Shown here piece after piece: positions 25,726-63,085 of a DNA stretch of 64,000 nt. The notes below the pieces were generated by a model. The model did not search any database. It saw only the letters and a list, made by a program, of their open reading frames with translations, and had not been told where the DNA came from. The position numbers and the translations under genes are program-made. Numbering within the stretch: the first letter of the stretch is position 1; every line of letters starts with the position of its first letter. The DNA is taken from positions 2,604,001-2,668,000 of the forward strand of contig JBLDXI010000033.1 in NCBI GenBank assembly GCA_047495785.1, given 5' to 3'. This DNA is from Lepidodermella squamata (lineage: Eukaryota; Animalia; Gastrotricha).

Positions 25726-28700
25726 TCAGACCGCATTAGGTGAGTCTGGCGTAAATGCCGCATTTGCTTGCTCGGTCTTGATGGCCGCGGCCATTTTCTC
25801 CTCTTTTCTGCGCTTCGATACGCCGCGAGGGTCGACGTCAAAGTTCGGTCCAAGGTGTTTAACGAGCCGGCGGTGTTTGACAAAGTACGGGCCCCAAGAG
25901 TTGGTCGGTGAGCACTTTTCCTTTATCCGCTGTTGAATAAAATGTTGCTATGTTGGAAAAATATTATTTCCTAAATAAATACGCACCTGCCACAAGTTTC
26001 CTTTCGCCGTGGCGATTTCGTAGATAGCTATTGCTGGCGGCCAAACCAACACGGCGGCTACGCAACACCAGCCGATGATTTCATCTGTCCTATTCGTCGC
26101 GATCGGCTCGTATGTTACGAATGAATAAATCAAGATGAATGTGATGATGCCTGGGCTGATGATGCCCCAAAAGGCCGTGATGTAGTATTGCCCACAGGCA
26201 ATCCAAGATGAACCCATCATAAGTTTGAGATCTTCGTGAAATTTGCTGCAGCCGTATAGCCAGCTGATGCTTAGAGTTTCGATGATTCCAACGATGAGAG
26301 CTCCCCAGCCTGATGAATATTCGTCGACGATTGTTGACAGGTAAGACCCTCCCTTCACCAACCAAAATTATTAAATAAAATCCTCGTAAATTCTCGAAAA
26401 ACGCTTTTCTTACGTTGCAAACCATTGGTATTCCAAGCAGAAAGAATAAGATACAGAATCCTCCTAAGAAACACGATTTTCTGAACAAATTAACGCGAAA
26501 GTAAGGTAGTTCGTCCAGGAATGCCTGTTGGAGAGAAAAGATTCGTCAATTGCGGAGTAAATGTAGGTCATCTCTAGTTAACTACCGTTAGAACTGTCTC
26601 CATCGTGTTGAATTCTGAATCTAGACCCAATAGCAGTAGCATGAAGAAAAAGGCGATAGCCCATGCAACGGATCCAGGTAGCTCAAGGACAATTTTTGGG
26701 TACATCACAAACTAATATTGCAATTTTTTGGTTTTGTTTTTACGAAGTAAACAGTTCAGGAAAATTACCGCTAAGCCAGTTCCCGCTGCCGCTACCTTGT
26801 CCACAGGCTTATCCAACAGCAGAGCTCCATATCCGATAATTGAAAATACAGCAAATCCTGCATAAAAATTTGCAGGGAATGAACAAGAGATGCCAAAGGT
26901 GAATTACCGGCGATGAATGAAGTGAAGCTATCGGCGAAAACTGAAATGGCAGGATAAAGGCTGTAAACTTTTCTACAACGAAGGCCTAGTTCAACTACCG
27001 GTAATAAGGGCATCTCGCAATACTGTAAAAGAAAGTTGGATTGTATGAGCAAATATATGCCAAGCTGACTTTTACCGTTGTTTTCGAACTTGTTGTATGA
27101 CGATAGAGCGATCATTCCTGGTGAGGTATTGACGAAATAGCTTCGAGCCTAAAATACTGCGGTTTATTCTTACCTCCCCATGAACAGCTGAGTGAAAAGA
27201 ACTGTGGAAGAGATAGAATCAAGCTTCAGGCAAATAATTTTCCTAATTTTACAAACCAATTGATTTGCTGCCGCGAACCAAACAGAGGGCTGTTTGATCT
27301 TTTCCCAATCTGGCGTTAGGTAAAATTTTATGCCGTCTAGCGCTCCCGGCAAACTGACACCGCGCCCGATCAGTATAAACAATATAAGGTAGCTATATAA
27401 GTAACATAGGGATATATTTCGCGGTGAATTTTTGGAAAGCGGCATCGCTTACGGAAAAACTGCTGTGAAGTACACAACTTTTCCACTGGTTTTGATGCCA
27501 TTCATTACTATAGCATTCGGTAGATAACCTGAACTTAATTAGAAATCTTAATTAGAGGGAAAATTACGGCACACAAAGACGAAGATCCAGGCTAGCAACA
27601 GGCATAAAACCAAACCCCATGACGGTGTACCTGTAATCAGATGATAGAATTGTTGGCAAACTAAATCCCTAATCTAGCGAACCTATGTTTTCTGTGTTAT
27701 CCGTGTCGTACATGCGTAAAACATAGTGATGAAAGAATTCATCTGTTGACAACTTTGGCGCTACGTCATTGTCTATTGCCAGATCTTCATCCCAGTAACC
27801 AAGGACCTGTTTCAATTGCTCGGAAAAATGAGTATTTCTTGTTGTTTGATTCAATACCGTCGAAGCGTTGCGATACAGATTGGCCGATGTCGCGTCGTAG
27901 AAATGTACGCAAGTCGCGCTGAAGTAGGATGTCTGATTGACTATGGATGAGGTGACATTCGGGCAGTCTGTGAAATTGAAAAATTCCGACGAAGACAATA
28001 AAGATAGACTTTCCCATGATTTCGTCAGGTATGTTGCGTTAAAGCAAAGCCCATCGGTTGATTTGATCTCTGTCATCGAAGAGCTGTTGCTATTATCACA
28101 TGGAACTTTCCCTAATTCACATCCTAGTGGCAACACATTCGAACGATTAGACGTTTTCATTATAGTGCAGAACTAACTGAAGTCAGCCCAAGATTCAAAA
28201 TCGCAATGCGTCCACGGAAGAACAGCCCGAAAAGATGCGCATAGCATGAAGATCGACCAGGCTATGTCAATTTAAATACAGGCTCATTGATACACAAATT
28301 GGAACCTTTAACCAACCAATGATAATGTTGTAGTAAATGCATGCTGGAATTGAATTTGTTATGATGAATTTATTTTACTGCAGCTGAAAATTACCCAGAG
28401 CTGATAGCGCAACCATTGCGTATCCGATTCCTCGAATGATAGGCGCAAAGCCCCAACAATGCATTGGACCTATGCAGTTGTCAATATAACCAGTGAAACA
28501 CTAGGCATACCTAGTCGAATTATCTTACCTAGACTTGTAAATTGGCCGATAGCTTGCTCGAAGTAGACTAGCGGAAATCCAACACAACAGCTGCGAGTGG
28601 ATAGTGATTCATTAGAATCGTTATACAGCAAGAAAATACTACCTTAGAATCCAGTAGACGATTAGGAAACAGCCTCCTCCATTCTTTGAAAACGTTTTGA

Positions 28701-29233
28701 AGTATTTTTAAAAGTTTTGGTTGCGGAAATTTTACCTTGTAACACTGATAGGGAAATCTCCAGATGTTTCCCAGCCCAACTGCCTGTTTCAGATAGAGAT
28801 TAGTACAAAAGTTATCATAAGATTATTTCCATGTCGCCCTGAATTAATGTAAGTCACTACTTTAACGGCAAGGTAAAATTGAGCCTCTGCAACATTTCGG
28901 CTCGCATTGAAGTGATATCTAAATCGACTGTTCTGTATGGCTTTCGTATAAAGCATTTCGTTTAATTTAGGTTTAAACAATCGGATCGGTTTATGATGGA
29001 ATAAGGCGAGATTTATTGGCAAATTCCCAACTCACATAACCAATGCAGCTGAGAATGAACTCGATGTGATTTGTCCAGTTACCACGCAAGCTTTCTTCGT
29101 TGTCGTCGTCATCGATGTTTCCCTTATCCGTCTCTGTTGCGTCATCCACTACCTTAACTGCACCCTCTGAGACTTCTGCCTGCCCAGCAACTTCTGGCGA
29201 TGCTTTGACAACGTCAACTTTGAGCGTCGCCAT
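25726..29233 (-). CDS. SLC6/NSS amino-acid transporter, GlyT2/ATB0,+-like (copy 3)
   Basis: [18 protein letters not shown]|[52 protein letters not shown]; last exon RIKEKCSPTNSWGPY...PNAV, stop at 25726. Confidence 0.9.
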
Positions 29234-30243
29234 CTCTACTGTAAATAAACATCAATGTGATAGATAGTGATATTAAATGGCTAACACTCTGTTTTGCCTT
29301 GCTGCAAGCTCTGTGTTTGAAACTTAGTTGTTGAAATAATATTTTCATAAATTATCGCAGGGCGTACCTCGTTATTGGCCGCGGCCATTGCTCGGCTATT
29401 AGGCGTGAGAAGATGATTCTACGATCCTATTTTTTATGACCCAGCTCTATCACATATAGTACCATAAATGATGACATAAGATCCATGTCATTCAATTAGC
29501 CCATTATTATTCTTGCGATTATCCCTGAACAATGAAGCCTTCGTCACAGATTGACGAGTAGCAATAATACCTGTGCATCGCGCTAAAACACGTCATGCAC
29601 CGCCATCAGCGATGATGTGATAGCGCTACGGCGATTATTTTGCTCTAGTTTTGCTGAAAAGTAGGTACGTTGCTTTTTTGTTCGTGGTGGTTGTAATATT
29701 GGCCAAAAAAAACAATAGAAACACTAATATATCTACTTGGGACAAAGGGATGCACGGTTGGTTGCAAATTCTCTCGTATGACATCAATCATTGTCATACA
29801 TAGTTGGTACAATTTCGTCAATGGTCTTTGCCCTATTAGTACTTACCGCAAAAAGCTTCGAGATGACACGATTTTGTCCCGAAAGACCAAGGTTAATCTC
29901 AGATAGAATTTATTTCAAGTTTCAGTTACAAAATTATCGACTCTCGCGCCCACCGCAATGGGACGGCTTTGTCAGGCTGGAAGGCAAAACTGAAAGCTGA
30001 GCCCTGATGCTCCTCAGAACTATTATAGGCTCAGTGAACTGATTGACAGCGAGTCAGTCAATAAAAGCAACAAGTTAGGTATTCGATTCTATAAAATTTC
30101 ATGAGGCGAGAAAGAGCAGCTCGTCAACTTGGCTGCGAATCCATAAAAAAGGTTCATCAAATGTTATTCAGCGACAAAAACAGCAGCAGTTATTCAAGGA
30201 GGGGCTAATGTTCAGTGTTCCAGCTTTTTCGAATAAATAATAT

Positions 30244-31641
30244 CTACCAGTTGAGCTCTTCCCTGGCTTTATCAAACTCGTGGCAGCCATCATAGAACTG
30301 ATAGTACCAGTTGCGCCAATCCTGAAGATTTCTATCTGTAAACGAGATTAAAAATCAAAGGTGAATTATTATAACAGGAAGGTTATATTTACCAGCTTCG
30401 GCTTTCATGTTGTACGTTAGGGTGGAGCCGAAAATTTTGTTATCCCAGATGCTAATATCGTTGAGGACTTGCTTCGTCTCTGCCCACAACATTTGAGCGG
30501 TCAACCAGTACGGCAAGAAGCGGCTTGCATAAATTTTGTGAGAAACGCGAATATTCATCTTGTCCAAAGGTGTGACGCTTTGTTGGAAGATAACTTCACA
30601 GAATGGCATTTTCAAAAACAGATAAACTAGGGCTGGGCCAACTTGGAAGCCAGTGGCGTTGAAAAAGAAGTATTTGTTGCCGAAAATCTCGATATAGCTG
30701 TCAAGGCTGATGATATTCATGTAGTTTTTGTTCTTCTCGGTGATGTATTTGCGCAGCAGTTTTTGCTTGAATTCATCGATATATTTGACTCTGTGGCGCA
30801 TTTTCTCGTAAACTTCCGGATCAGCAGCTCGAACACTGGTCATGGTCCAATCGAATTGAACAAGCGAGAAGTGTTTCCAAATGCGTTTGTGCAAAAAGTC
30901 AAAGTGGCGAACATCAGCGCCGTTCTCAGGAATTTCCTGAATGTGACAGTTGACATAGTTGAGGCTTTCGCCTCGTTTATCCAACGTTTCGTCCAGGTTG
31001 AATAGCAGCGGCTCAAAGGGCTGCTCCTCATTATCAACGCCGCGGCTGTGGAGCCAAACGTAGATGCAAGTGCTGTGTTCGACGACCTTGTACTTCTTGA
31101 GCCTAGCAGCGCCTTCGTAAAATTTCTTCAGATAGGCTCCATCAGTTTTCTGCGCCTCCTTAACCCCACCTGCGTACTCAAATTGGGTGCATTGCTTCTC
31201 TATCGGTGTTTTGTAGGAAACAACGCAGTTGCCGGTAGAACCCTCGAACTGCCAGCCATGGAACGGGCATTCGATGCAGTTGCCCTTGACTTTGCCGCCC
31301 TTGCCAAGGTTGGCGCCCATGTGCAAGCAGAACGCGTCCAGCGCAAATACCTTTCCCTCCTCCGTGCGGAAGACGACGAGGTCGCGCCCGCAACTGTCGA
31401 CGTATTTCGCTTCATTCGGCTTCAAGTCAGCGGAATCGAGAACACGATACCAGCCGTTAGGAAAGAACGGCGGGCATTTCCCGCGAGGCGTTCGAACCTT
31501 GACTGAATCGGTGACTCGCTCCTTCTGCTCGAATATGTAAAATCTATACTTTCGATAATAAAGTCCATAGAGCACAAGGCCGACTAGGGTCGAGATGATG
31601 GCGCATTTGTTCTCCTGAATGTAAACTTGCAATGCATCCAT
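30244..31641 (-). CDS. nvd: Rieske-type sterol (cholesterol) C7-desaturase, Neverland/DAF-36/Des7 family (exons 31641-30393, 30335-30244)
   Basis: N-terminal TM; PPFFPNGWY; Rieske C-x-H (DAFCLHMGANL) and CPFHGW; non-heme Fe motif EIPENGADVRHFDFLH; DISIWDNK. A 57-nt GT-AG intron (30336-30392) restores the C-terminus DRNLQDWRNWYYQFYDGCHEFDKAREELNW*. Confidence 0.93.
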
Positions 31642-34384
31642 TACGATGTTGGTGTAAAGCAACTTCAAATTAAAAACATAAAACAAGGATTCGATGAAAA
31701 TCAAGAGAATCAGGTGATAAACTGCTATAAAATATTACGAAAATATTTGTAGACGAAGATTAGATATCATTACTCATTTTTTAGAAAGAAATGCGCGTAG
31801 GTGGTGAGCAGCTTATAAACCACTAAATTTATAACGCGATATAGGAAAAATATTCGAAATATTTTGATATTCGAATATCTGATTGTCCTGTGTCCTAATT
31901 ATTAATATTAGTTCATCTCTATTTTCAAAGCTGCCTTAATTGAAGCTGATAGGTGCGAAATATCATGATAAACGTGTCGCAATTCCTATCAATATTCGGT
32001 AGATTTTAAAGCGGATTTGAAAATTCACAGAGGCAGTGATTTAATTACTCCTGATTGCGTTCGCAAACTGTCAAAGCGGAAGATTCTTGAAGCTATGCGG
32101 TACACGCAGCCCTTTCAAATCGATAGATCGCAGGTGTGCAGTAGAAGTAGGTCAAAATATCCTATTTATTTTGACGCGCGTCCCGCTGCAAAGGAATCGG
32201 CGCTATAGCATTGAAGCATTGAAGGCTATTGAAAATCAGCTCAAAGAAACATGCATAATTAATATATCAGGTGGCTCAATAGGAATGGTATTACAGCTAT
32301 GGAGAAAGGTCTGGCAAAATGAGGAACGTACTGCGTGAACTAAAAGATACGCCGCTGTGAATTTTAGCAGGCAACGGCTGAACTTCGAACCCCCAGTTTT
32401 CGGCGAGGCGTCATGTTTCACGTGCTGTGTTAGCGAAATAACGTTTGAGCAATAGGATTTGACCCCATGCGCTACAGTGTGTTATGTGACGCGTACCTAC
32501 ATGGAAGTTTCGCGACAGAAAACGTCTTGTCAACTGCTTCTAGTCGCTCCTCTTAACGGGCAAAAAACTGAAAAAGTGGTTACTATTTCGTGCTCTATTG
32601 TTGTCAGGAAAACGTGGCGCCCATAAAGTACAGAGAATCTTGGTAGCCAGTTATTGCACACCGAGTATTGGTTTCCCGCACGCAGTAAAAATAAACATAC
32701 CTACCGCGTAATTTTGCTTTTACGCTGCAATCCGAAATTTTAATTCATAAAAATAATCTTGAGCGTGCGTAAAAATGCTCAACACGGCTGTGAGTAGGCA
32801 GTTAATTACGTGTCGCGCGCGTAAAAGCTGATGGACATGTGTTATCTCTACGGTGCCGTTGCGTTCACTACATTTCTTGGACAAAAAAATTGTTCCCATG
32901 AATGGACACGACTGCTATTTTTTCTTTACGCGAGGCCATTGTTGCGAAAAATACCAAAATATTTGCGCGGGTAAAACAGTATGGGATTAGCAAAGCACGT
33001 AGCTCCCATTGAAAAAGTACGGCAAACGTCCGGCAAACGTACGTATAGCAACTGTATGTGGAAAGCCATCAGCGAGAAATATTTTTCTATATATGTTCAA
33101 TTAAACCATTCAATCAATTTGATATTAGGTGAGCTAATTTAAATCTGCGCAAAAAATGTCATAGCACCTAAAACCAAGTATAGAATTTTATTTGCTTGAG
33201 AAAGCTTCTTTTTTACTCGTAGCGGGCTCAATGGGGGTTGCTGCACTTGCGTTGCCTATTCCACAATGAATGCAATTATAGTTGCCTCGTTTCGGACGAG
33301 ACATATAGGCAACCGGCAAGTTCGTGACAACATTTTCATGCGTTTTTAAATGAAAAATACAGCGAAAAATGAACGCAGTTTTAAAATTGATATATTTACT
33401 GTATAACGCGGTCTTATTTCGGACAAAACTGTGTTTTTCGGGCCTCGTTTATGGACAGGGGTGAATTTTAAAACGCACCTTGCTCAAAAAGATGCGCCTT
33501 GAAAAACTGCATACCCTGGTTTTTATAACTGTAAAAATATGCCTTCTTCCGCACAGGTAAATTACGGGTAACCGACTCGGCTAATTCGGACGCAATTGGG
33601 TATCATTTCGGACAGCTCAATGTGAATATTTAGTTTAAGTTCTGAGTTCACATAATAATTTGTGATCAGATTTGAGGGATGAAAATAAAAATACCAATTG
33701 ATGCCGAGGGATTCGTACCCTCTATAGTGAATTGCGCTCCTAACACAGCTAAGCGCTGTGTGCTTTTCCAACTAAAATATGAAGTTACAATATAATTTCA
33801 AGGGCGGGTGGTTACCTATGTTTTTTTTTGTTTTTTTTTATTAATGCGCTGTTCGAGCTTAGCCACGACAAAAATGTCATTCAAACGCATTCCCTGTGGA
33901 ATTGTGTGGGTTAAAATCCTTTAAAACATTCTTGTCGAACTAAATTCGATGCACTCTTTCCTTTGCGTTAATTTCAAAAAATCAAAAGATTCCATCGGAT
34001 GAATAAAAGTTAGCAATTTTCGACGACGGAACACACCTGCGAATAAGTTGGACCATTCTTCGCAGACTGATCCGTTTTTTCTAATGCTTCAGATATCACT
34101 TTAAAGAAGAAAATCAGGGCTATCTTTTGAACAGTGCTTATTGATTGACTTCCGTCTCTCAACTATTGTAAGCCGCTTTTTAACAACGTAAGCAACGCTT
34201 TTTTAACCACTGCCCGTCACAATACGAAGTTGCAAGGCTGGAAAGCCTCGGAGCAAAGCCGTATTGAGACCACACCTGACTAATCTCAATTGTTCAAAGC
34301 TGATCGGAACTCCAAAAGCAAGGTAAGCCACACGGACCTTTTTCCAGCCTGAGACCAATATTTATACTCAACACCTCTCGAAGA

Positions 34385-35497: not shown

Positions 35498-36322
35498 TCA
35501 CGCCCGATCGATTGATTGTTGCTGAAGGATTGGTAGCTGCTGCTCCCTAGCTTGCTGAACAAGCGTGCAAGGTCGACAACAACATGTCTCAAATAGATCT
35601 TGGCTGGAAGATCCAAGGATATTCCTCTGTAGCCGAATTTTCCGCCTCACCAACGAGCCGATAAGGCATGAGAGCGGACAGCAGCATTCAACGATGCTAG
35701 ATAAATTATTATTACTGTTGCTTAGGAAATTCACTTTTTCAAGGAGTGTGACTAACCAGCAAGCGATGCCGTTGTCTCCAGCAGCTTCCGCGACCCTTCC
35801 AGCGACGTAACAAGGGCAAAAACATGAAAGAACGCACCATCGCATTCCTTCTTCGTCATTCAGACCTTCATTGCACGTGACGAATAGCAAGTCAATTTTG
35901 CGATGAAAATGTTTATTAGGACTCACATGAGAATAGGTTGTATGACCAGTCATTCTTGTTTGCTGTTGGATCAATCAGTTCAACGAGATCTCGCCTGCAA
36001 AAATGAAATTTGATTAGTTTTTTCAGCAATTTCATACGCCTACTAACTTGTCTTTGCCTTGAGATGAGCGGTGAGGCGGGACGATGGCACTGTACGGATT
36101 ATGCGAGAAATCATCGCGATCGTGATATTCCTGGCTTGTGTCTAAAATTGGCGATAGCTGTTCAGTGGTGACAACCGTATACGCCGTTTGATCTTCGGGA
36201 CCACCGATCTGAGTCGTCAAAACAACCTGGCTCATTGGAGAATCCACTGCATAAGTTGCCATATTTTGTCTATCCAACGTCGACGTCGGCGACGTTGTGT
36301 TGCTATTATTGCTCATATACAT
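35498..36322 (-). CDS. PLAC8/cornifelin-family cysteine-rich protein
   Basis: CVLSCFCPCYVAGRVAE, CCCPLSC...VRRKIRLQRNILGSSSQDL...CCCRPCTLVQQARE; several short introns. Confidence 0.82.
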
Positions 36323-56011: not shown

Positions 56012-56908
56012 ATGGAGTTCGGGGCGTTTTTAAAGTCTCTGCAATCACCAGTTGAAAAATTCAAGACTGCTATTCTGTGCAATGACTTGAACGACCTGTG
56101 CGCTGTCCTAGCCTCCATAGCAGACTTGAATGTTGCAATCGACGACCAACTTGGAAGACGTGGTCTCCATCTCGCTTGTCTCCACAAAAATTCCGAAATG
56201 ATTGAATTGTTGCTGAGAAATGGTGCGAATCCATCAATTCCCGACGATCTTGGACTTTTGCCGTGGCATTTGGCGTTGAATGCTGGTGCTCAGAGAGGAT
56301 TTCGGCTAATTCTGTCGTCTTCACCTGTTGAATTACCCTCTTCGTTATGGCAAAATATCGAAAGAGGAAATGTTGACCACCCTTCTTTGGCCACTAACAC
56401 GCATCACAGTTTTGTGATTGCACTTAATATCAAGAAGTTTGGCCTGGCAGATTCATTGGCTTCAACGTTTATCAAAGCTATTGTTCCAGGTGAATTGAGT
56501 GGCTCTTCATTGGCGCATTGCGAATCCTTCCTGAGTCATTTTGCGTCTGCTGACGTTGTTTTGAAGCTGTTTTTTCTTGCTGGCAATCGACTTCCTGTAG
56601 CTGCGCGTGAGAGGGTTAAGTTGCTTTGCTCACCCGAACTGTCGACCTGGATAGATGAGACCCACAATAGACCTTGGAGTTTGCAAGCTATATGCAGGGC
56701 CGTTATAAGGCGTAACTGTTCGAAGAATACCTTTTATTCACTCAATTCCATCGAATATCCAGAATTATTAAAGGAATATCTGGCTTTCAATTATGATGAT
56801 ACTTATGAAGTTTCTACCCGTCCACACTTGCATATCATTGCTCCTTGGAGGCGGCGGTTCAACAACGTCCTCATTGAGCCGGGCGTCTTTCCGAATGAAC
56901 AAAACTGA
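56012..56908 (+). CDS. Ankyrin repeat and SOCS-box protein (ASB-like), intronless
   Basis: Ankyrin repeats (GRRGLHLAC...IELLLRNGANP, GLLPWHLA) and a C-terminal SOCS box PWSLQAICRAVIR...YPELLKEYL. Confidence 0.82.
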   Translation: MEFGAFLKSLQSPVEKFKTAILCNDLNDLCAVLASIADLNVAIDDQLGRRGLHLACLHKNSEMIELLLRNGANPSIPDDLGLLPWHLALNAGAQRGFRLILSSSPVELPSSLWQNIERGNVDHPSLATNTHHSFVIALNIKKFGLADSLASTFIKAIVPGELSGSSLAHCESFLSHFASADVVLKLFFLAGNRLPVAARERVKLLCSPELSTWIDETHNRPWSLQAICRAVIRRNCSKNTFYSLNSIEYPELLKEYLAFNYDDTYEVSTRPHLHIIAPWRRRFNNVLIEPGVFPNEQN

Positions 56909-57130
56909 ATGAATCGCCAGCATGATTAAGCTATTTCATGTATCCTTTTCTTTTGAAGAGCAAAATGCACACTAACTAGATGGCGCATAATGGTACCTCG
57001 ATTTCCTTTTCCAATTAGATGAAATCGAATGCTCCGTGTATAACGCGCTATCAATTGCTTGATTGAATCCACCATATACGGCTTTTGCTTAATTGTGCAA
57101 TAATAATTTATTTCAGATTTTAAGTGAAAT

Positions 57131-58989
57131 ATGAATTCACTCGAAGAAAAGGTTCGCTCTTTGATTATCAAAGGTGACGAACACGAAGACTCTGAGGAGG
57201 AAAAGGATGCGGTTGACGAAGGGTCAACGGATGAGGAAGACTTATACGATGGCTTAGAAGGAATCGATTTTTCGGGCGAAAGAGCAGGTTTGTTTGTTTC
57301 TCATCCAGATTCCTTAAATGCTGATTTCCTTTGATTCTTGTAGATTTTACGAAGAAATTCCAGAAAATCACGTCAAACCCTTCTAATCTGTCAAATGTTG
57401 ACGCATCGAATAAAAAAAGTGATGCTGACAAAGCCGTAAAATGTGAATCACAACATAAACGTTTACTAGCGAGAATCAATGTTGGTAAGTTGCGGGATGA
57501 CAAATTTTAAGAATGATATCGAAGGCACAATTCCTATTCAGATCGTTATGATGGACCTCCGATTCGTGAGCATACGGTCGTCAATTCCTTGGTATCTAGT
57601 ACAAAAAGCTTGGATCAGGCCCGCTGTTACTTGCGAGATAAAGCTGATAGAGCCACCGTTGAACTTGCGCTTGATCGGCAGACCCGTATGGTTCTCTTCA
57701 AGCTTCTAACTCGAGGAGTGGTGACTAGAATTAACGGATGTGTTTCTACTGGAAAAGAAGCAAATGTTTATCATGCGACGTCTGCCGACAAACCAGACTG
57801 CGCCATCAAGGTGTACAAAACGTCAATTTTGACTTTTCGCGATCGTGACAAGTACGTTTCCGGAGAATTTCGATTCCGCCACGGTTATTGCCGGCGAAAT
57901 CCTCGCAAAATGGTCGCCATGTGGGCGGAAAAGGAGTTGCGTAATCTCATTCGCCTCCAAGCGGGGGGTTTGCCTTGCCCAGTGCCAATTGCTCTTCGCC
58001 GTAATGTTTTAGTCATGGAATTTCTCGGAGTGAACGGCTGGCCTTCTCCATTGCTCAAGGAAGTCGATCTCCCTCGATCCAAGTGGCGCTCACTCTACAC
58101 CGATATAGTGCGAAACATGCGAATCATGTACCACCGATGTAAATTGGTTCACGCCGATCTGTCCGAGTACAATTTGATTTACCACCAATCTCAGGCTTAC
58201 ATTATCGATGTATCCCAATCGGTGGAACACGACCACCCTCATGCACTGGACTTTTTACGCACGGATTGCTCGAACATAACCGCGTTCTTTGAGAAACATC
58301 GAGTCGCCGCCATGAGCGTCCGACAGCTGTTTGATTTCATAACCGATCCAACCATCACCGATGATTCTGTAGATGAATACCTCGATAAAATGATGGAAAT
58401 TAATGTTCAGCATTCACAGCATATTAATCAAGAAGGCGAAGATGGGGACCGAAACGGTGACGATGTCCTGTTTGAAAATCAAAACAAAGTCGACGCTGCT
58501 GTGTTCCGAAACGTTTACATTCCTCGAACTCTGAACGAAGTAACGACGTATGAGGAAGACATTCCGATGTTAGTGCCTTCGGTCAATCCTTCGCTGGTTT
58601 CGCATCCCGCTGATAAATTTTACGCTGTTGTTACTGGTCAAAAGCCAGACTTCACCGGTCCAAAGAAAAAGCCTTTAATTTTGGAACACGAAGACCATCG
58701 TTCAGACGACGATGCTGAACTTGCTGAGGAGTTGGACAGCGATGAGTTGAGTGGCGAAGATAGTTCCCAAAGCGGCGAGGAAAGCAATGAAATTGGGGAG
58801 GATGGCGTACGGCGAGAACGAGTACCTAAAAATCCCATTGGGCGGCCTCGTGACGAATCGCCAAATAGTCGCAAAGAGAGAAAACGGTTGATAAAAGAAG
58901 AACAGCGGCAAAAACGAGCTGAGAAGACCCCTAAGCATGTGAAGAAGCGGCGCGAGCGTGTTGCCAAAGTCAACTCAAAGCGGCGCTAA
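57131..58989 (+). CDS. RIOK1: RIO kinase 1
   Basis: DKADRATVELALD, STGKEANVY, AIKVYKTSILTFRDRDKYVSGEFRFRHGY, LVHADLSEYN, IIDVSQSVEHDHP and a Lys/Arg-rich tail; two short 5' exons from ATG 57131. Confidence 0.95.
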
Positions 58990-59305
58990 ACGCGCCATTT
59001 ATTTCTCTTGTTGCTGATTGGTTTCAAAATAAAATATGCCGTTGACATAAAAGTTCTACCTCGCCGGTCCGAAAATAATTCTCGACTATAGCATAACCTT
59101 ATTTTTAGATTTTCATTTGCTGATCCACGGATCCTGTAGGCAAGTTTTAATACGCATTTAAGAGACACACTTTCGAAAATCAATTCAAGTAAACATAAGA
59201 CGTAATTTTTGAAGACGCGCAGGGGGTATCGTAATCGGGCTGAAAATTATATAAATCATTTTAGTAACCGGAATTTTTTCAAATAGATATTTATTTGATT
59301 GAGTA

Positions 59306-60212
59306 ATGGAATCGTCCAATGAAGATAGTTCAACCAGTTTCTCGTCGTGTGTTGCTGCCAGCAACGCGCCCTCGTCTGATATCAAGGCCGAACCGCGCTG
59401 CGGCACCCCTGAAATCGCAGAGAAGCCCACACCGACGCCAATGAGCAGCATTGACTGGACTCCAGAGCTGGAAATTGCTCTATTTCGCCAATTGCGTCAC
59501 CATCGCCCAATCGGCTTTGCGCGTCACTTGCAAATGATGCTGATCGTGGAGAAGTTTTCCGCAGCTTACGGCAAACCAGTGTCCGCGAAATGTCTGTGGG
59601 ACCGCATCGAGTCTTACTACAATTTGGGAATGCTCGACGAGTCAGAGCGCCAGGATGAGGCGCCTCCGAACGGAGATTTCGAGCTCGAACCGACAGCTGC
59701 TTTCGCTGATTTGCAGGTAATATCTCGACGGCGAGAATATCCGAGAATAATCTCATTCGATTTTTTTTTTCACTCAGGCCAAACCATTTCCTCGTGCAGG
59801 CGAGTCTGATTCAGATCTTGATCAACCACTGGCTGCCTGCATTCCATCGACTCATCACAGCCATCCCGCGAAATCAGCCTCCTGCCAAGAATCGGATGCT
59901 CAGTCGTTGTCAACAGATGCGCTATCGATTTCGAACATGGGCGAATCGTCCCGTGCATCAACACCTGGCCCAGTTTTCGGCCAGCCATCAAGTGCCAGTG
60001 TATCTAGTTCCCAGCGACGTCAAACACGGAATAAACGTACCACCGCACCTACCTCGATCGCATCTGCTGAAGACAGCACTTCAGCCGCTGAATTCAAACC
60101 AAAACCGGTTAGCACTCCTCTTGGCACGCCGAGTGCTGCAATGAGTGCCCCAATTTCTGTCATCACCGGAAATTCCGGTCGCTCAAATCGAAAGCGTACC
60201 AGCAAAAATTAG
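59306..60212 (+). CDS. MRGBP: MRG-binding protein / Eaf7 (NuA4/TIP60 subunit); intron 59717-59777
   Basis: IDWTPELEIALF...RPIGFARHLQM...LWDRIESYYNLGMLDESE...DFEL Eaf7-type motif followed by a disordered tail. Confidence 0.85.
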
Positions 60213-60346
60213 CTCATCAATTTTTACTGCTTTTTCTTCCTTATTAAACATTAAATCGTCTTTCTTTTTTGAATTTTCGACTCATTAATTTTCAATCAAT
60301 TTTTTTTAATTATAGACACAATTTTTAGCTAGTTTTGCGGATATAA

Positions 60347-61836
60347 ATGACATCTGTCATTGCACCGGCCATGATTTGGTTTCATTTGTACCGTAAATTG
60401 ACATCACGCTCATCGCTCGCCACCTTCATTTGTTTGATGAGTCTCTTCGTCATCCTCGTCTTTCTTCTCTTCACCGCAACTGTAACTTACAGTCGGCGCA
60501 ATGCCGAGCGGGACGGTCTTCTCGCGGCATTCAACGTTTCCGGGTCCAAATTTGTCATCTCGCGTATTATCGCTCAATTCTACGAGGACAGGAGCGACGG
60601 AAGCAAAGTGTTTGAAGAAGTTGACGTGACTGTCGAAAAGCAGAAGCCACTGCTCGTCATTGCCGTTGTCAGCGCTTTCAAGCATGCCGAGCAGAGGAAT
60701 GCGATTCGAGCGACCTGGGGCCACCCTCTTACACAATTATCTGAAAATGTGATCGTGCGCTTTTTCGTTGGTCGCCGCCCGAATGAAACCGGGCTGGAGA
60801 CCAGTACAGCTTTTTACAACGAAACTTCCCGGTTTGACGACGAAATTGAAGTTCCGATTGAAGACAGCTACAAACGACTGGCATCTAAATCGAAGCTTGT
60901 TCTCAATTGGTTCGCTAATTACGCCCCGGTTGCTGACTATTTTATGAAGGTAATTATTACATTTCATTCGGGTCAAAATAACGGTTGTTGTGCGTAATCA
61001 GCTCATCAAGTTGCCGCCATCTTCTCTAACATGTAGGTTGGGCTTGCATGGGTAGAAGAGATTAGCTTTATAGGCGTAGTTTTACTGGTACTGGTTGGCT
61101 TGGCGATGCAATATTTTTTTCGCTTATTTGACGCGTTTCTGTTGAATTTTAGGTGGATGACGATTCCTATGTCAACTTGCCTGGTTTGGCCACGTATCTT
61201 CGAAATGTGAAACAAGCCGAAGTGATGCAGCGGCTTACCCGAAGCGTGTTCCTATGCCATCTCCATGTCAACGCGACACCGGTCCGCGACCAATTTTCTT
61301 CCTGGTTCGTTGACGAGTCGCAATTCAACAAGACCCGATACCCGGCTTATTGCTCGGGGTCTGCCTATGTTTTCTCGAGCGCAGCAGCTAAGCCCCTCGC
61401 CGAGCGGGTGGGATCGCTGCTGCTGCTGCAGAACAGTAAACCTGGCGACGAGGGTCCTGAGGTTCCAGAGGACGTGTTGGTGACTGGCTTCGCGGCGGCG
61501 AATCTCAGCCTCACGCACATAAACATGTCCCCGTTTTTCGAATGCTGTCACTACGCCAACTCGACGCATAACGGCATTGCACCGCCCGACAACAGCCTGA
61601 TCGAGTGGCTATGTCGGCGGGCCGTCGAGGGCGCCCTAGTCCTACACCCGTTGAAACACGCCACTTCGTCGCCTTCAAATGTGATGGGAGCGTTGCTGGT
61701 CGCCTCCCTCACAGCGTCTTACCACGACTGTCTAAATTTGGCGACGACTTCGCCGGGCAATCATAGCTCGGAGGACGACCCTCTTGGCAGTATTCTGACG
61801 ATTCGGGAAGCCGCCGCCGATCCCGGATTCGTGTAG
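60347..61836 (+). CDS. GT31 beta-1,3-galactosyltransferase/brainiac-like Golgi glycosyltransferase; intron 60950-61152
   Basis: N-terminal TM; RNAIRATWG; EDSYKRLASKS; FMK|VDDDSYVN; YPAYCSGSAYVFS; EDVLVTG. Confidence 0.9.
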
Positions 61837-62194
61837 CAGTTGCTCATTTTGTACTAACTTGCCTTGTATTACTGGTGCTTCTTTCTTCTTCTCACAACGA
61901 TGATGGTATTATTGCGCCTCTCTCTCTTCCTTTTTCACAGCAATGATGTTGTCAGTTTTTGTTACACAAAAGTTGTTGCGACTACTAATCTCAAGCTTTG
62001 TTGTTTGACATTTTTTATGAACCAAGACAATCAACAGTATTTACAACAAAATGAAATGAAAACGAAATGTAATTGCAACCGTGTTTTTTCGGGATTAAGC
62101 TGGCTTCCTTTTCATGTCCTGAGACGTTCCATTGGATCATCTCAATTGATTATCTGTAGATTTTCATTTTAGATGTTTTATACTCTTGGAATGT

Positions 62195-63085
62195 ATGGAA
62201 ACTGAGTCACCAGACGAGCCAGAGTCCTTACTCGCGCGTCTTTTGTCCTTCGAGCTGATCGAAGGTTTGTCAAATGACGTTCTGCTGATCTTCATCGGTA
62301 TCGCCTTCACCATGGCCTATTTCCTGCGCCACCTGCTCGCCTACGTTCACGCCAACGTGAACCGGTCGTCTGACGACCCTAACAACCCCGCCCCGATCCA
62401 CCCCGAAGCTGAAGAGGCCATTTCCGACACGAGGCGCCGGCTTTTCGGCGCTAGCGGCGCAGGCCCGGCCCGCACTAGTCGCGCCCTCGGCCCGGACGCG
62501 ATCTGCCCCATTTGCCTGGCTGAACCCATTCGCCTGCCGATCGAGACCAACTGCGGTCACGCGTTCTGCGGCCGATGTCTTTCGACGTACCTCGCGTACG
62601 ACTCAAATAACCTTCAGCCGGTTCGCTGCCCAGTTTGCCGGCAACGCGTCACCCTGTTGCTGCCTGGTTTCGCGCTGGAAGAAGCGCGCAGTCTTTCGCC
62701 GGAAGACCGTCGGGCTGTTCTCGACCCTCTCCGCCACTACAATCGCCGTTTTTCAGGCGAGCCGCGATCTTGGCTCGAACAGATCGCGGACTTGCCCACT
62801 CTTTTGCGGCATCTCGTCGGTGCCCTGTTCTCGGAATCAGGTCTCGCGCTAGTTATGCGGCTCCGGGTGCTGCTAATCCTGCTGTTCGCCGCTTTCTACC
62901 TGTTGTCACCTATCGATTTGCTACCTGAAGCGCTGCTCGGTGCTTTTGGTCTTCTCGACGACCTTTTCATCTTCTTCCTGCTCGCCGTCTACGTCACGAT
63001 GATCTACCGCCGTTACGCCGCTGCTAACCCGCAGTTTCTCGGCCCGGGCATCGAAGACCCGGTGGAACAACCCGATGAGGAATGA
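62195..63085 (+). CDS. RNF170: ER-membrane RING E3 ligase RNF170-like
   Basis: N-terminal TM; C3HC4 RING CPICL...ETNCGHAFCGRC...CPVCRQ; YNRRFSGEPR; DUF1232-type YLLSPIDLLPEALLGAFGLLDD. Confidence 0.92.
   Translation: METESPDEPESLLARLLSFELIEGLSNDVLLIFIGIAFTMAYFLRHLLAYVHANVNRSSDDPNNPAPIHPEAEEAISDTRRRLFGASGAGPARTSRALGPDAICPICLAEPIRLPIETNCGHAFCGRCLSTYLAYDSNNLQPVRCPVCRQRVTLLLPGFALEEARSLSPEDRRAVLDPLRHYNRRFSGEPRSWLEQIADLPTLLRHLVGALFSESGLALVMRLRVLLILLFAAFYLLSPIDLLPEALLGAFGLLDDLFIFFLLAVYVTMIYRRYAAANPQFLGPGIEDPVEQPDEE

What the first reader, a model, noticed from the sequence alone, without database searches (positions are those of the whole stretch)
30244..31641. Protist/ciliate-type Rieske sterol C7-desaturase embedded in an animal genome: candidate eukaryote-to-animal HGT
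Seen: an intact Neverland/DAF-36-family enzyme in the standard code, with one 57-nt intron of local size, between an SLC6 gene and a PLAC8 gene, so contamination is unlikely. It has an ~25-aa insert after the Rieske CPFHGW (EKQCTQFEY...DGAYLKKF), a long insert in the catalytic domain (RAADPEVYEKMRH...FKQKLLRKYITEKNK) and a C-terminus LTYNMK...LQDWRNWYYQFYDGCHEF...W. Established: this family makes 7-dehydrocholesterol (ecdysteroid and dafachronic-acid pathways) and also occurs in ciliates (Tetrahymena Des7p). Recollection, not an alignment: these inserts and the tail match Des7p, whereas animal Nvd/DAF-36 lack them. Inference: the gene came from a protist (possibly prey), then gained an intron, and supplements or replaces the animal gene. 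A donor using the TAR=Gln code would have needed recoding, so a standard-code protist is the more plausible source.
Basis: partly seen in the sequence, partly recalled or inferred. Interest (0 to 1): 0.85.

Follow-up and report, generated by a model that had tools for sequence, protein, structure and literature searches.

The report
Ciliate-type sterol desaturase in an animal
This animal genome carries an intact, highly expressed cholesterol 7-desaturase gene whose sequence and insertions are of the ciliate type, not the animal type; bdelloid rotifers share it, so it looks like an old protist-to-animal gene transfer into a steroid-precursor step.

Summary
A 446-aa Rieske oxygenase gene lies on the minus strand (ATG 31641, stop 30244) with one 57-nt GT..AG intron. 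It sits between an SLC6 gene and a PLAC8 gene. RNA contigs show the exact splice, a poly(A) site and high expression. An independent DNA run covers the gene and its flanks at equal depth.

The protein belongs to the Neverland/DAF-36/Des7 family, but to its ciliate-type branch. Like Paramecium, Stentor and Blepharisma homologues, it has +26-aa and +29-aa insertions. It lacks the +11-aa and +16-aa segments found in every animal, choanoflagellate and filasterean Nvd sampled.

Trees place it with unnamed metagenome sequences and bdelloid rotifer genes, next to Paramecium. An AU test rejects grouping these with animal Nvd (p = 5.6e-88). It also rejects placing the rotifer branch at the base of the ciliate-type clade (p = 2.5e-5).

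The transfer reading is therefore supported, with amendments. The transfer is old, not private to this genome, and was followed by lineage-specific intron gains. The direction is favoured, not proven. The donor is not pinned down. Whether the gene replaces the canonical animal gene was not testable here. No paper reporting this was found.

The parts
30393..31641 (-). Coding exon 1 (residues 1-416 plus the first base of codon 417). It holds the N-terminal membrane helix, the Rieske domain and the catalytic domain.
   Evidence: RNA depth is 500-860 in run X2. The model has pLDDT 90.5, with helices at residues 2-32.
30336..30392 (-). A 57-nt spliceosomal intron (GT..AG, phase 1, inside codon 417).
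   Evidence: An X3 RNA contig joins 30335|30393. An X2 loose end at 30336 continues with exon-1 letters. The two nearest relatives, L005 and L006, have an intron at the same position and phase. Neighbouring SLC6 introns are 51-55 nt.
30244..30335 (-). Coding exon 2 (residues 417-446 plus stop TAG), the conserved C-terminal tail.
   Evidence: The tail aligns with ciliate, rotifer and animal homologues.
29893..30243 (-). 3' UTR of about 350 nt. AATAAA lies at 29914-29909 and the poly(A) site at 29893.
   Evidence: Poly(T) loose ends lie before 29893 in runs X2 and X3, and RNA depth drops to 0 below it.
31642..31665 (-). Short 5' UTR. A T-rich tract and an AG acceptor (31664-31663) lie upstream of the ATG. 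Here the mRNA is joined to 19 or more nt that are not in the window, which is a candidate spliced leader.
   Evidence: The loose end at 31665 is, table 7. The 19-mer is absent from the window with up to 2 mismatches.
31258..31329 (-). Rieske [2Fe-2S] ligands C105, H107, C125 and H128 (C-x-H ... C-P-F-H).
   Evidence: These columns are invariant in 16- and 53-sequence alignments.
30889..30915 (-). Mononuclear-iron motif D243-x2-H246-x4-H251. The third ligand candidate is D395, at 30457-30459.
   Evidence: These columns are invariant. The motif is that of Rieske non-haem iron oxygenases (established knowledge).
31111..31221 (-). Insert-1 region (residues 141-177), a net +26 aa relative to animal, holozoan and prokaryotic homologues. 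It is modelled as an added beta-hairpin.
   Evidence: Segment W130..E188 is 57-59 aa in the window group, 61-66 in bdelloids and 51-58 in ciliates, against 32 in animals and 27-35 in prokaryotes. The model has strands 150-156 and 171-178 with pLDDT 88-96.
30730..30819 (-). Insert 2 (residues 275-304), +29 aa in the catalytic domain, modelled as helices.
   Evidence: Segment W265..L313 is 49 aa in the window group and bdelloids and 41-50 in ciliates, against 19-21 in animals and holozoans and 9-36 in prokaryotes. The model has helices 277-280 and 286-299 with pLDDT 89-97.

Best explanation
The gene encodes a membrane-anchored Rieske non-haem iron oxygenase of the cholesterol 7-desaturase family (Neverland/DAF-36/Des7). 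Its inferred mechanism follows the family. An N-terminal helix anchors it in an internal membrane. A reductase system reduces the [2Fe-2S] cluster (C105, H107, C125, H128). The electron then passes to the mononuclear iron (H246, H251, probably D395). That iron activates O2 and removes the C7 and C8 hydrogens of cholesterol, giving 7-dehydrocholesterol.

The gene does not descend from the animal nvd gene. It belongs to the ciliate-type branch of the family. It entered an ancestor shared by this animal, bdelloid rotifers and many uncultured freshwater micro-animals by horizontal transfer from a ciliate or a ciliate-like protist. The donor probably read TAA/TAG as stops.

Since then it has been inherited vertically and has taken on host features:
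- Its base composition matches host genes.
- It gained lineage-specific spliceosomal introns.
- It has a poly(A) signal.
- It probably receives a trans-spliced 5' leader.

It is under purifying selection and is strongly expressed.

What is shown: gene structure, expression, integration, family membership at the sequence and fold level, ciliate-type indels and tree position. What is inferred: enzymatic activity, direction and age of the transfer, and the donor's genetic code.
For: Gene, splicing, poly(A) site, expression and even DNA depth.

Animal neighbours on both sides.

Homology: unnamed metagenome or Logan proteins are 55-62% identical, bdelloid rotifers 41-49%, ciliates 39-44% and animal Nvd only 32-34%.

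Indels: the window shares +26, +29 and +3 aa states with ciliates and rotifers. It lacks the +11 aa and +16 aa states of all 20 animal and unicellular-holozoan sequences. Prokaryotic outgroups lack all of them, so each state is derived.

Trees: [Paramecium + (bdelloids + window group)] has support 100/94 and 99/91. Animals are monophyletic at 99/98 and 100/97.

AU tests: animals + rotifers + window group as one clade is rejected, dlnL 341, p = 5.6e-88. A rotifer branch at the base of the ciliate-type clade is rejected, dlnL 43, p = 2.5e-5.

Age and vertical descent: the bdelloid genes lie in chromosome-scale contigs among animal genes with 2-3 introns. The window's intron is shared with its two nearest relatives. 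GC3 is 0.62, inside the host range of 0.43-0.68. Against DNA run X1 there are 3 synonymous SNPs and 1 D>E change.

Family membership: catalytic residues are invariant. The model (pLDDT 90.5) matches reviewed Nvd/DAF-36 proteins best, with E 1e-28 to 1e-32 and TM 0.67-0.72, and then KshA.

Genetic code: the Paramecium homologue has 13 in-frame TAR codons.

Literature: the Tetrahymena C-7 sterol desaturase is a Rieske oxygenase with orthologues in oligohymenophorean ciliates (PMC4967820 and PMC9485055, both citing Najle 2013).
Against: - The nesting next to Paramecium is not significant on its own. Holding the seven named ciliates together costs only 11 lnL, p-AU 0.26.
- The position of the whole ciliate-type clade relative to Holozoa is unresolved. 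There is a trichotomy, and animals + clade A as one clade gives p = 0.069.
- Most members of the clade are unnamed environmental sequences. The inference that the non-rotifer members are protists rests on three named ciliate genera and on contig features.
- The window group was delimited after seeing a first tree, which weakens the formal AU p-values. That matters little at 1e-88.
- The ciliate-type clade sits on a long stem, so long-branch effects cannot be fully excluded. The indels are independent of them.
- The animal's identity is hidden, so 'rotifer lineage' is inferred from the gene tree only.
- No enzymatic assay exists for this protein or for any rotifer homologue.
Confidence: 0.78

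Rival explanations
1. The transfer ran the other way. A divergent version of nvd arose in the rotifer lineage and was passed to ciliates and other protists.
For: Animals + the whole ciliate-type clade as one group is not rejected, p = 0.069. Ciliate monophyly outside the rotifers is not rejected, p = 0.26.
Against: Placing the rotifer/window branch at the base of the clade is rejected, p = 2.5e-5. The clade includes heterotrichs (Stentor, Blepharisma) and Paramecium, which span the deepest split in ciliates. That split is older than rotifers (established knowledge). Rotifer genes lack the +11 and +16 aa states shared by all sampled animals, choanoflagellates and filastereans. An animal origin would therefore need two precise deletions as well as two insertions.
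Confidence: 0.06
2. Ancient paralogy with differential loss. The ancestor of animals had both types, and only the rotifer-related lineage kept the ciliate-like one.
For: Two well-separated clades exist. The inserts occur in more than one animal group, namely bdelloids plus the window group.
Against: This needs independent loss in every other sampled animal phylum, in choanoflagellates and in filastereans. The rotifer clade is nested beside Paramecium, not sister to all ciliates. The window group is 39-44% identical to ciliates, which is too close for a split as old as the root of eukaryotes.
Confidence: 0.05
3. The donor was not a ciliate. It was a third party, such as another protist or a giant virus, that carries the same type and passed it to both ciliates and the rotifer lineage.
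For: The deepest branch of the clade (P0108, P0110, P0124) lies on dense, intron-free contigs that look giant-virus-like. The Atlas lists Nucleocytoviricota clusters of Rieske + KshA_C proteins. Many clade members are unnamed. A standard-code donor is needed.
Against: A scan of IMG/VR found no relative. The closest named sister group is Paramecium, with starred support.
Confidence: 0.09
4. Contamination or mis-assembly. A protist contig has been stitched into an animal scaffold.
For: None beyond the foreign affinity of the protein.
Against: DNA depth is about 91 and flat across the gene and flanks in an independent run, and contigs bridge 29335-31485 and onwards. The intron, poly(A) signal and GC3 are host-like. 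Animal genes lie on both sides. The same type is integrated in the Adineta vaga chromosome CP075492.1.
Confidence: 0.01

Closest known systems
Ciliate sterol C7-desaturase (Tetrahymena thermophila Des7p; Paramecium, Stentor and Blepharisma 'cholesterol 7-desaturase')
   Same: Same family and same sub-type. It shares the +26 and +29 aa inserts, the +3 aa state and the short N-linker, and it lacks the holozoan +11 aa segment. It is 39-44% identical. Paramecium is the sister group in the trees.
   Different: The window gene is encoded in an animal genome in the standard code. It has a 57-nt intron, whereas the Paramecium homologue has three 23-25-nt introns. It also has GC3 0.62 and a poly(A) tail. 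The Paramecium gene has 13 in-frame TAR codons and 30% GC. Des7p itself was not in my alignments.
Bdelloid rotifer 'cholesterol 7-desaturase' genes (Adineta vaga, A. steineri, A. ricciae, Rotaria spp., Didymodactylos carnosus)
   Same: Same ciliate-type clade and the same indel states. They form the sister clade of the window group, with support 94/86 and 89/61. They are integrated among animal genes.
   Different: They are only 41-49% identical. Their introns are at residues 57-59, 227-229 and 248, and none matches the window's at 417. Bdelloids have two paralogue groups. Databases name them as ordinary animal enzymes.
Animal Neverland / DAF-36 (Drosophila Nvd, C. elegans DAF-36, vertebrate and spiralian Nvd)
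   Same: Same enzyme family, fold and catalytic residues, with an N-terminal membrane helix and a conserved C-terminal tail. These are the best structural matches, TM 0.67-0.72. The reaction is presumably the same.
   Different: They are 32-34% identical. They lack both inserts and have the +11 aa and +16 aa holozoan segments. They form a separate, well-supported clade, and a joint clade is rejected at p = 5.6e-88.
KshA, bacterial 3-ketosteroid 9-alpha-hydroxylase oxygenase (PDB 4QDC, 2ZYL)
   Same: It is the nearest solved structure, with a Rieske domain plus a KshA_C catalytic domain and a steroid substrate.
   Different: It is about 17% identical and soluble. It is a hydroxylase, not a desaturase, and has no membrane helix or inserts.

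Membership tests
Neverland/DAF-36/Des7 cholesterol 7-desaturases (Rieske non-haem iron oxygenases) | Rieske [2Fe-2S] ligands C-x-H ... C-x-x-H | tested here: met
   C105, H107, C125 and H128 are invariant in 53 sequences. Pfam Rieske scores 2.8e-22.
Neverland/DAF-36/Des7 cholesterol 7-desaturases (Rieske non-haem iron oxygenases) | Mononuclear iron motif D-x2-H-x4-H plus a downstream Asp, within a KshA-like catalytic domain | tested here: met
   D243, H246, H251 and D395 are invariant. Pfam KshA_C scores 1.2e-10.
Neverland/DAF-36/Des7 cholesterol 7-desaturases (Rieske non-haem iron oxygenases) | N-terminal membrane helix and conserved C-terminal W-R-x-W-Y-x-Q-F-Y tail | tested here: met
   The model has helices at residues 2-32. 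The exon-2 tail aligns across the family.
Neverland/DAF-36/Des7 cholesterol 7-desaturases (Rieske non-haem iron oxygenases) | Fold closest to characterised Nvd/DAF-36 proteins | tested here: met
   The eight top Swiss-Prot models are all Nvd/DAF-36, with E 6e-28 to 4e-32 and TM 0.67-0.72. KshA comes next.
Neverland/DAF-36/Des7 cholesterol 7-desaturases (Rieske non-haem iron oxygenases) | Converts cholesterol to 7-dehydrocholesterol | not testable with these tools
   This needs heterologous expression and sterol analysis.
Ciliate-type sub-clade (Des7-like) | +26 aa after the C-P-F-H-G-W motif and +29 aa in the catalytic domain | tested here: met
   The segment lengths are 58 and 49 aa, as in ciliates. 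Animals have 32 and 20.
Ciliate-type sub-clade (Des7-like) | Groups with ciliate sequences in ML trees | tested here: met
   Support is 100/94 and 99/91 for the clade with Paramecium.
Holozoan/animal Nvd clade (vertical descent) | +11 aa segment after the L-H251 motif and +16 aa linker between the membrane helix and the Rieske domain | tested here: not met
   The window has 15 and 24 aa. All 20 animal and holozoan sequences have 26-30 and 40-41 aa.
Holozoan/animal Nvd clade (vertical descent) | Falls inside the animal clade in phylogeny | tested here: not met
   The constraint is rejected, dlnL 341, p-AU 5.6e-88.

The most novel reading that the evidence does not exclude
Xenologous replacement across a whole clade. 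The lineage that holds this animal and the rotifers lost the ancestral holozoan neverland gene. It runs the first committed step of sterol-derived signalling (7-dehydrocholesterol supply) on an enzyme captured from a ciliate-like protist. Giant-virus-like relatives at the base of the clade hint at a viral vehicle.
Probability: 0.3. Interest if true: 0.72.

Novelty: new member of a known kind. Interest (0 to 1): 0.58.

Why it matters
Neverland/DAF-36 catalyses the entry step of ecdysteroid and dafachronic-acid synthesis, and it is treated as a conserved, vertically inherited animal gene. This work shows that one animal lineage (this genome, bdelloid rotifers and many planktonic relatives) carries a ciliate-type version of the gene.

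That gives a clean, testable case of an old eukaryote-to-animal transfer into a hormone-precursor pathway. It has independent indel evidence, intron gain after transfer, and RNA support.

It also warns that 'daf-36' and 'cholesterol 7-desaturase' annotations in rotifers are not orthologues of the animal gene. This matters for work on rotifer dormancy and steroid signalling (for example PMC10821554).

Tried and rejected
- Identifying the organism failed. Run names are coded. The best named RIOK1 hits are molluscs at about 51%. The Atlas gave no useful taxa. Cluster members carry no organism names. The sample accessions appear in no paper.
- A viral relative was sought in IMG/VR and none was found.
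- A bacterial origin was rejected. The best prokaryotic matches are 25-38% identical, lack the inserts and form the outgroup.
- A tardigrade origin was considered and dropped. Tardigrades lack nvd (PMC6170570), and the gene tree points elsewhere.
- An intron shared with bdelloids or with Paramecium was tested and not found.
- The candidate leader string was searched in the window and in papers, with no hit.
- Najle et al. 2013 is not held in the library, so its claims are cited only through later papers.
- I could not test whether this genome or the rotifers also keep an animal-type nvd. Earlier notes on this genome mention no other Rieske gene, which is weak evidence.

Full report
**1. What is there**

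The minus strand of the window holds a two-exon gene. The ATG is at 31641 and exon 1 runs to 30393. A 57-nt GT..AG intron (30392-30336) follows in phase 1. Exon 2 runs from 30335 to the TAG stop at 30246-30244. The product is 446 aa. Pfam finds a Rieske [2Fe-2S] domain (2.8e-22) and the KshA_C catalytic domain (1.2e-10). tblastn finds no second copy in the window.

**2. Is it real, expressed and part of the host genome?**

Public runs were laid on 28200-34100.
- An RNA contig of run X3 joins 30335 to 30393 exactly and ends in poly(A) at 29893. An AATAAA signal lies 16-21 nt upstream.
- Run X2 covers 29893-31665 at depth 500-860, against about 0-20 in the flanks. It also carries the spliced form, seen as a loose end at 30336.
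- DNA run X1 comes from another sample with a few SNPs. It has flat depth of about 91 over the gene and both flanks, and its contigs tile the region.

The neighbouring gene on the minus strand is an SLC6/SNF transporter with 51-55-nt introns. PLAC8 lies at 35498-35974. The window also encodes HNF1, a homeobox protein, a tyrosine kinase, an Ank-SOCS protein and RIOK1.

The gene's GC3 is 0.62, inside the range of host genes (0.43-0.68). Of four coding differences from X1, three are synonymous and one is D>E. Contamination is therefore very unlikely.

**3. What family, and which branch**

The best hits are unnamed metagenome or Logan proteins (55-62% identity). Next come bdelloid rotifers (41-49%), then Paramecium, Blepharisma and Stentor (39-44%). 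Animal Nvd and Capsaspora follow only at 32-34%.

Alignments show that the Rieske ligands (C105, H107, C125, H128) and the iron motif (D243, H246, H251, D395) are invariant.

An AlphaFold model built on 53 sequences has pLDDT 90.5. Its best matches among reviewed proteins are the eight characterised Nvd/DAF-36 enzymes (TM 0.67-0.72). KshA comes next. No Nvd structure has been solved.

**4. The inserts**

Segment lengths were measured between invariant anchors in 84 sequences.

| Segment | Window group | Bdelloids | Ciliates | Animals | Unicellular holozoans | Prokaryotes |
|---|---|---|---|---|---|---|
| W130..E188 | 57-59 | 61-66 | 51-58 | 32 | 31-34 | 27-35 |
| W265..L313 | 49 | 49 | 41-50 | 19-21 | 19-21 (animals and holozoans together) | 9-36 |
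| H251..W265 | 15 (window; ciliate-type clade about 15) | about 15 | about 15 | 26-30 (all holozoans) | 26-30 (all holozoans) | median 13 |
| Helix-to-Rieske linker | 22-26 (whole ciliate-type clade) | 22-26 | 22-26 | 40-41 | 40-41 | not compared |

A further 3-aa difference lies near residue 400.

So two insertions define the ciliate-type clade and two define Holozoa. The window protein has the ciliate state at all five characters. In the model both ciliate-type inserts are ordered: a beta-hairpin at 150-178 and helices at 277-299.

**5. Phylogeny**

A 78-row ML tree (LG+C20 PMSF) and a 60-row tree rooted with prokaryotic homologues agree on four points.
- Animals are monophyletic (99/98 and 100/97), with sensible internal order.
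- The window protein sits in a group of 18 unnamed sequences (99/96).
- That group is sister to the bdelloid rotifer genes (94/86 and 89/61).
- Paramecium is the next sister (100/94 and 99/91), inside a clade that also holds Stentor, Blepharisma and many unnamed sequences (100/100).

Four AU tests were run.

| Constraint | Result |
|---|---|
| Animals + bdelloids + window group as one clade | rejected, dlnL 341, p = 5.6e-88 |
| Rotifer/window branch at the base of the ciliate-type clade | rejected, dlnL 43, p = 2.5e-5 |
| The seven named ciliates held together | not rejected, p = 0.26 |
| Animals + whole ciliate-type clade as one group | borderline, p = 0.069 |

The groups were partly delimited after a first FastTree run. 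That is a caveat for the weaker tests.

**6. Who else has it, and how old is it**

The bdelloid genes lie in large contigs among animal genes. In A. vaga the gene is on chromosome CP075492.1 between DZIP1 and a KH-domain gene. In A. steineri it lies beside Orai and a K+ channel gene. They have introns at residues 57-59, 227-229 and 248.

Lake-metagenome contigs of the window group (GC 23-26%) carry animal-type neighbours such as tetraspanin, SCHIP-1 and a CEP290-like gene. They have either no intron or one near residue 389.

The two nearest relatives (62% identity, GC 45-47%) have an intron at exactly the window's position and phase.

The transfer therefore predates the split between bdelloids and the window group, and introns were gained later in separate lineages. 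The window's organism is hidden. From the gene tree it is probably a rotifer or a close ally, but this is an inference.

**7. Donor**

Paramecium is the nearest named relative. However, its gene has 13 in-frame TAA/TAG Gln codons, 30% GC and three 23-25-nt introns at other positions.

The deepest branch of the clade lies on dense, intron-free contigs that look giant-virus-like, but IMG/VR gave no relative. The donor remains open.

**8. Literature**

The Tetrahymena C-7 desaturase is a Rieske oxygenase with orthologues in oligohymenophorean ciliates, animals, Capsaspora and Salpingoeca (PMC4967820, PMC9485055). Naegleria has one too (PMC8296547). A Brachionus study treats rotifer 'daf-36' as the orthologue of the animal gene (PMC10821554). 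Four searches found no paper that reports the ciliate affinity of rotifer genes. The library is incomplete, and Najle 2013 itself could not be read.

**9. Verdict**

The transfer interpretation is supported, but it is redated. It is an old transfer shared by a lineage, not a recent capture private to this genome. The function (cholesterol to 7-dehydrocholesterol) is inferred from family membership. Whether the gene replaced the canonical animal gene was not testable here.

Noticed in passing
window 31642-31665 (minus strand): The mRNA's 5' end carries 19 nt (GCGAATTTGATTTGTGTCT, then AAG shared with the genome) that occur nowhere in the 64-kb window. They are joined at a T-rich tract plus an AG acceptor 21-24 nt upstream of the ATG. 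This is a candidate 3' part of a trans-spliced leader, and other readers of this genome suspect SL trans-splicing.
   Followed up: partly
window 33322-33715: DNA depth in run X1 rises from about 91 to 411-1636, with several loose ends. This looks like a dispersed repeat between the desaturase gene and PLAC8.
   Followed up: no
window 56012-63085; locus L093: The same-strand run Ank-SOCS > RIOK1 > two or three ORFs > RING/DUF1232 keeps its order in the contig of a relative whose RIOK1 protein is 71% identical. There the gaps between genes are 60-100 nt, which is operon-like.
   Followed up: partly
loci L090 and L091 (proteins P0110, P0108, P0124): The deepest branch of the ciliate-type clade is encoded on dense, intron-free, two-strand lake-metagenome contigs. 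Most of their ORFs have no Pfam hit. They look like a giant virus or a very compact protist. The Atlas also lists Nucleocytoviricota clusters of Rieske + KshA_C proteins.
   Followed up: partly
locus L010 (MAG labelled Nitrosopumilaceae): It encodes a 395-aa homologue with an N-terminal membrane helix. This groups with a EukProt transcript (P0112) inside the eukaryotic family, not with prokaryotes. It is probably a mis-binned eukaryotic or viral contig.
   Followed up: partly
loci L007 and L008 (Adineta vaga, A. steineri): The bdelloid genes fall into two paralogue groups. They share phase-1 introns at residues 57-59 and 227-229, so these introns were gained before the bdelloid duplication and independently of the window's intron.
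   Followed up: yes
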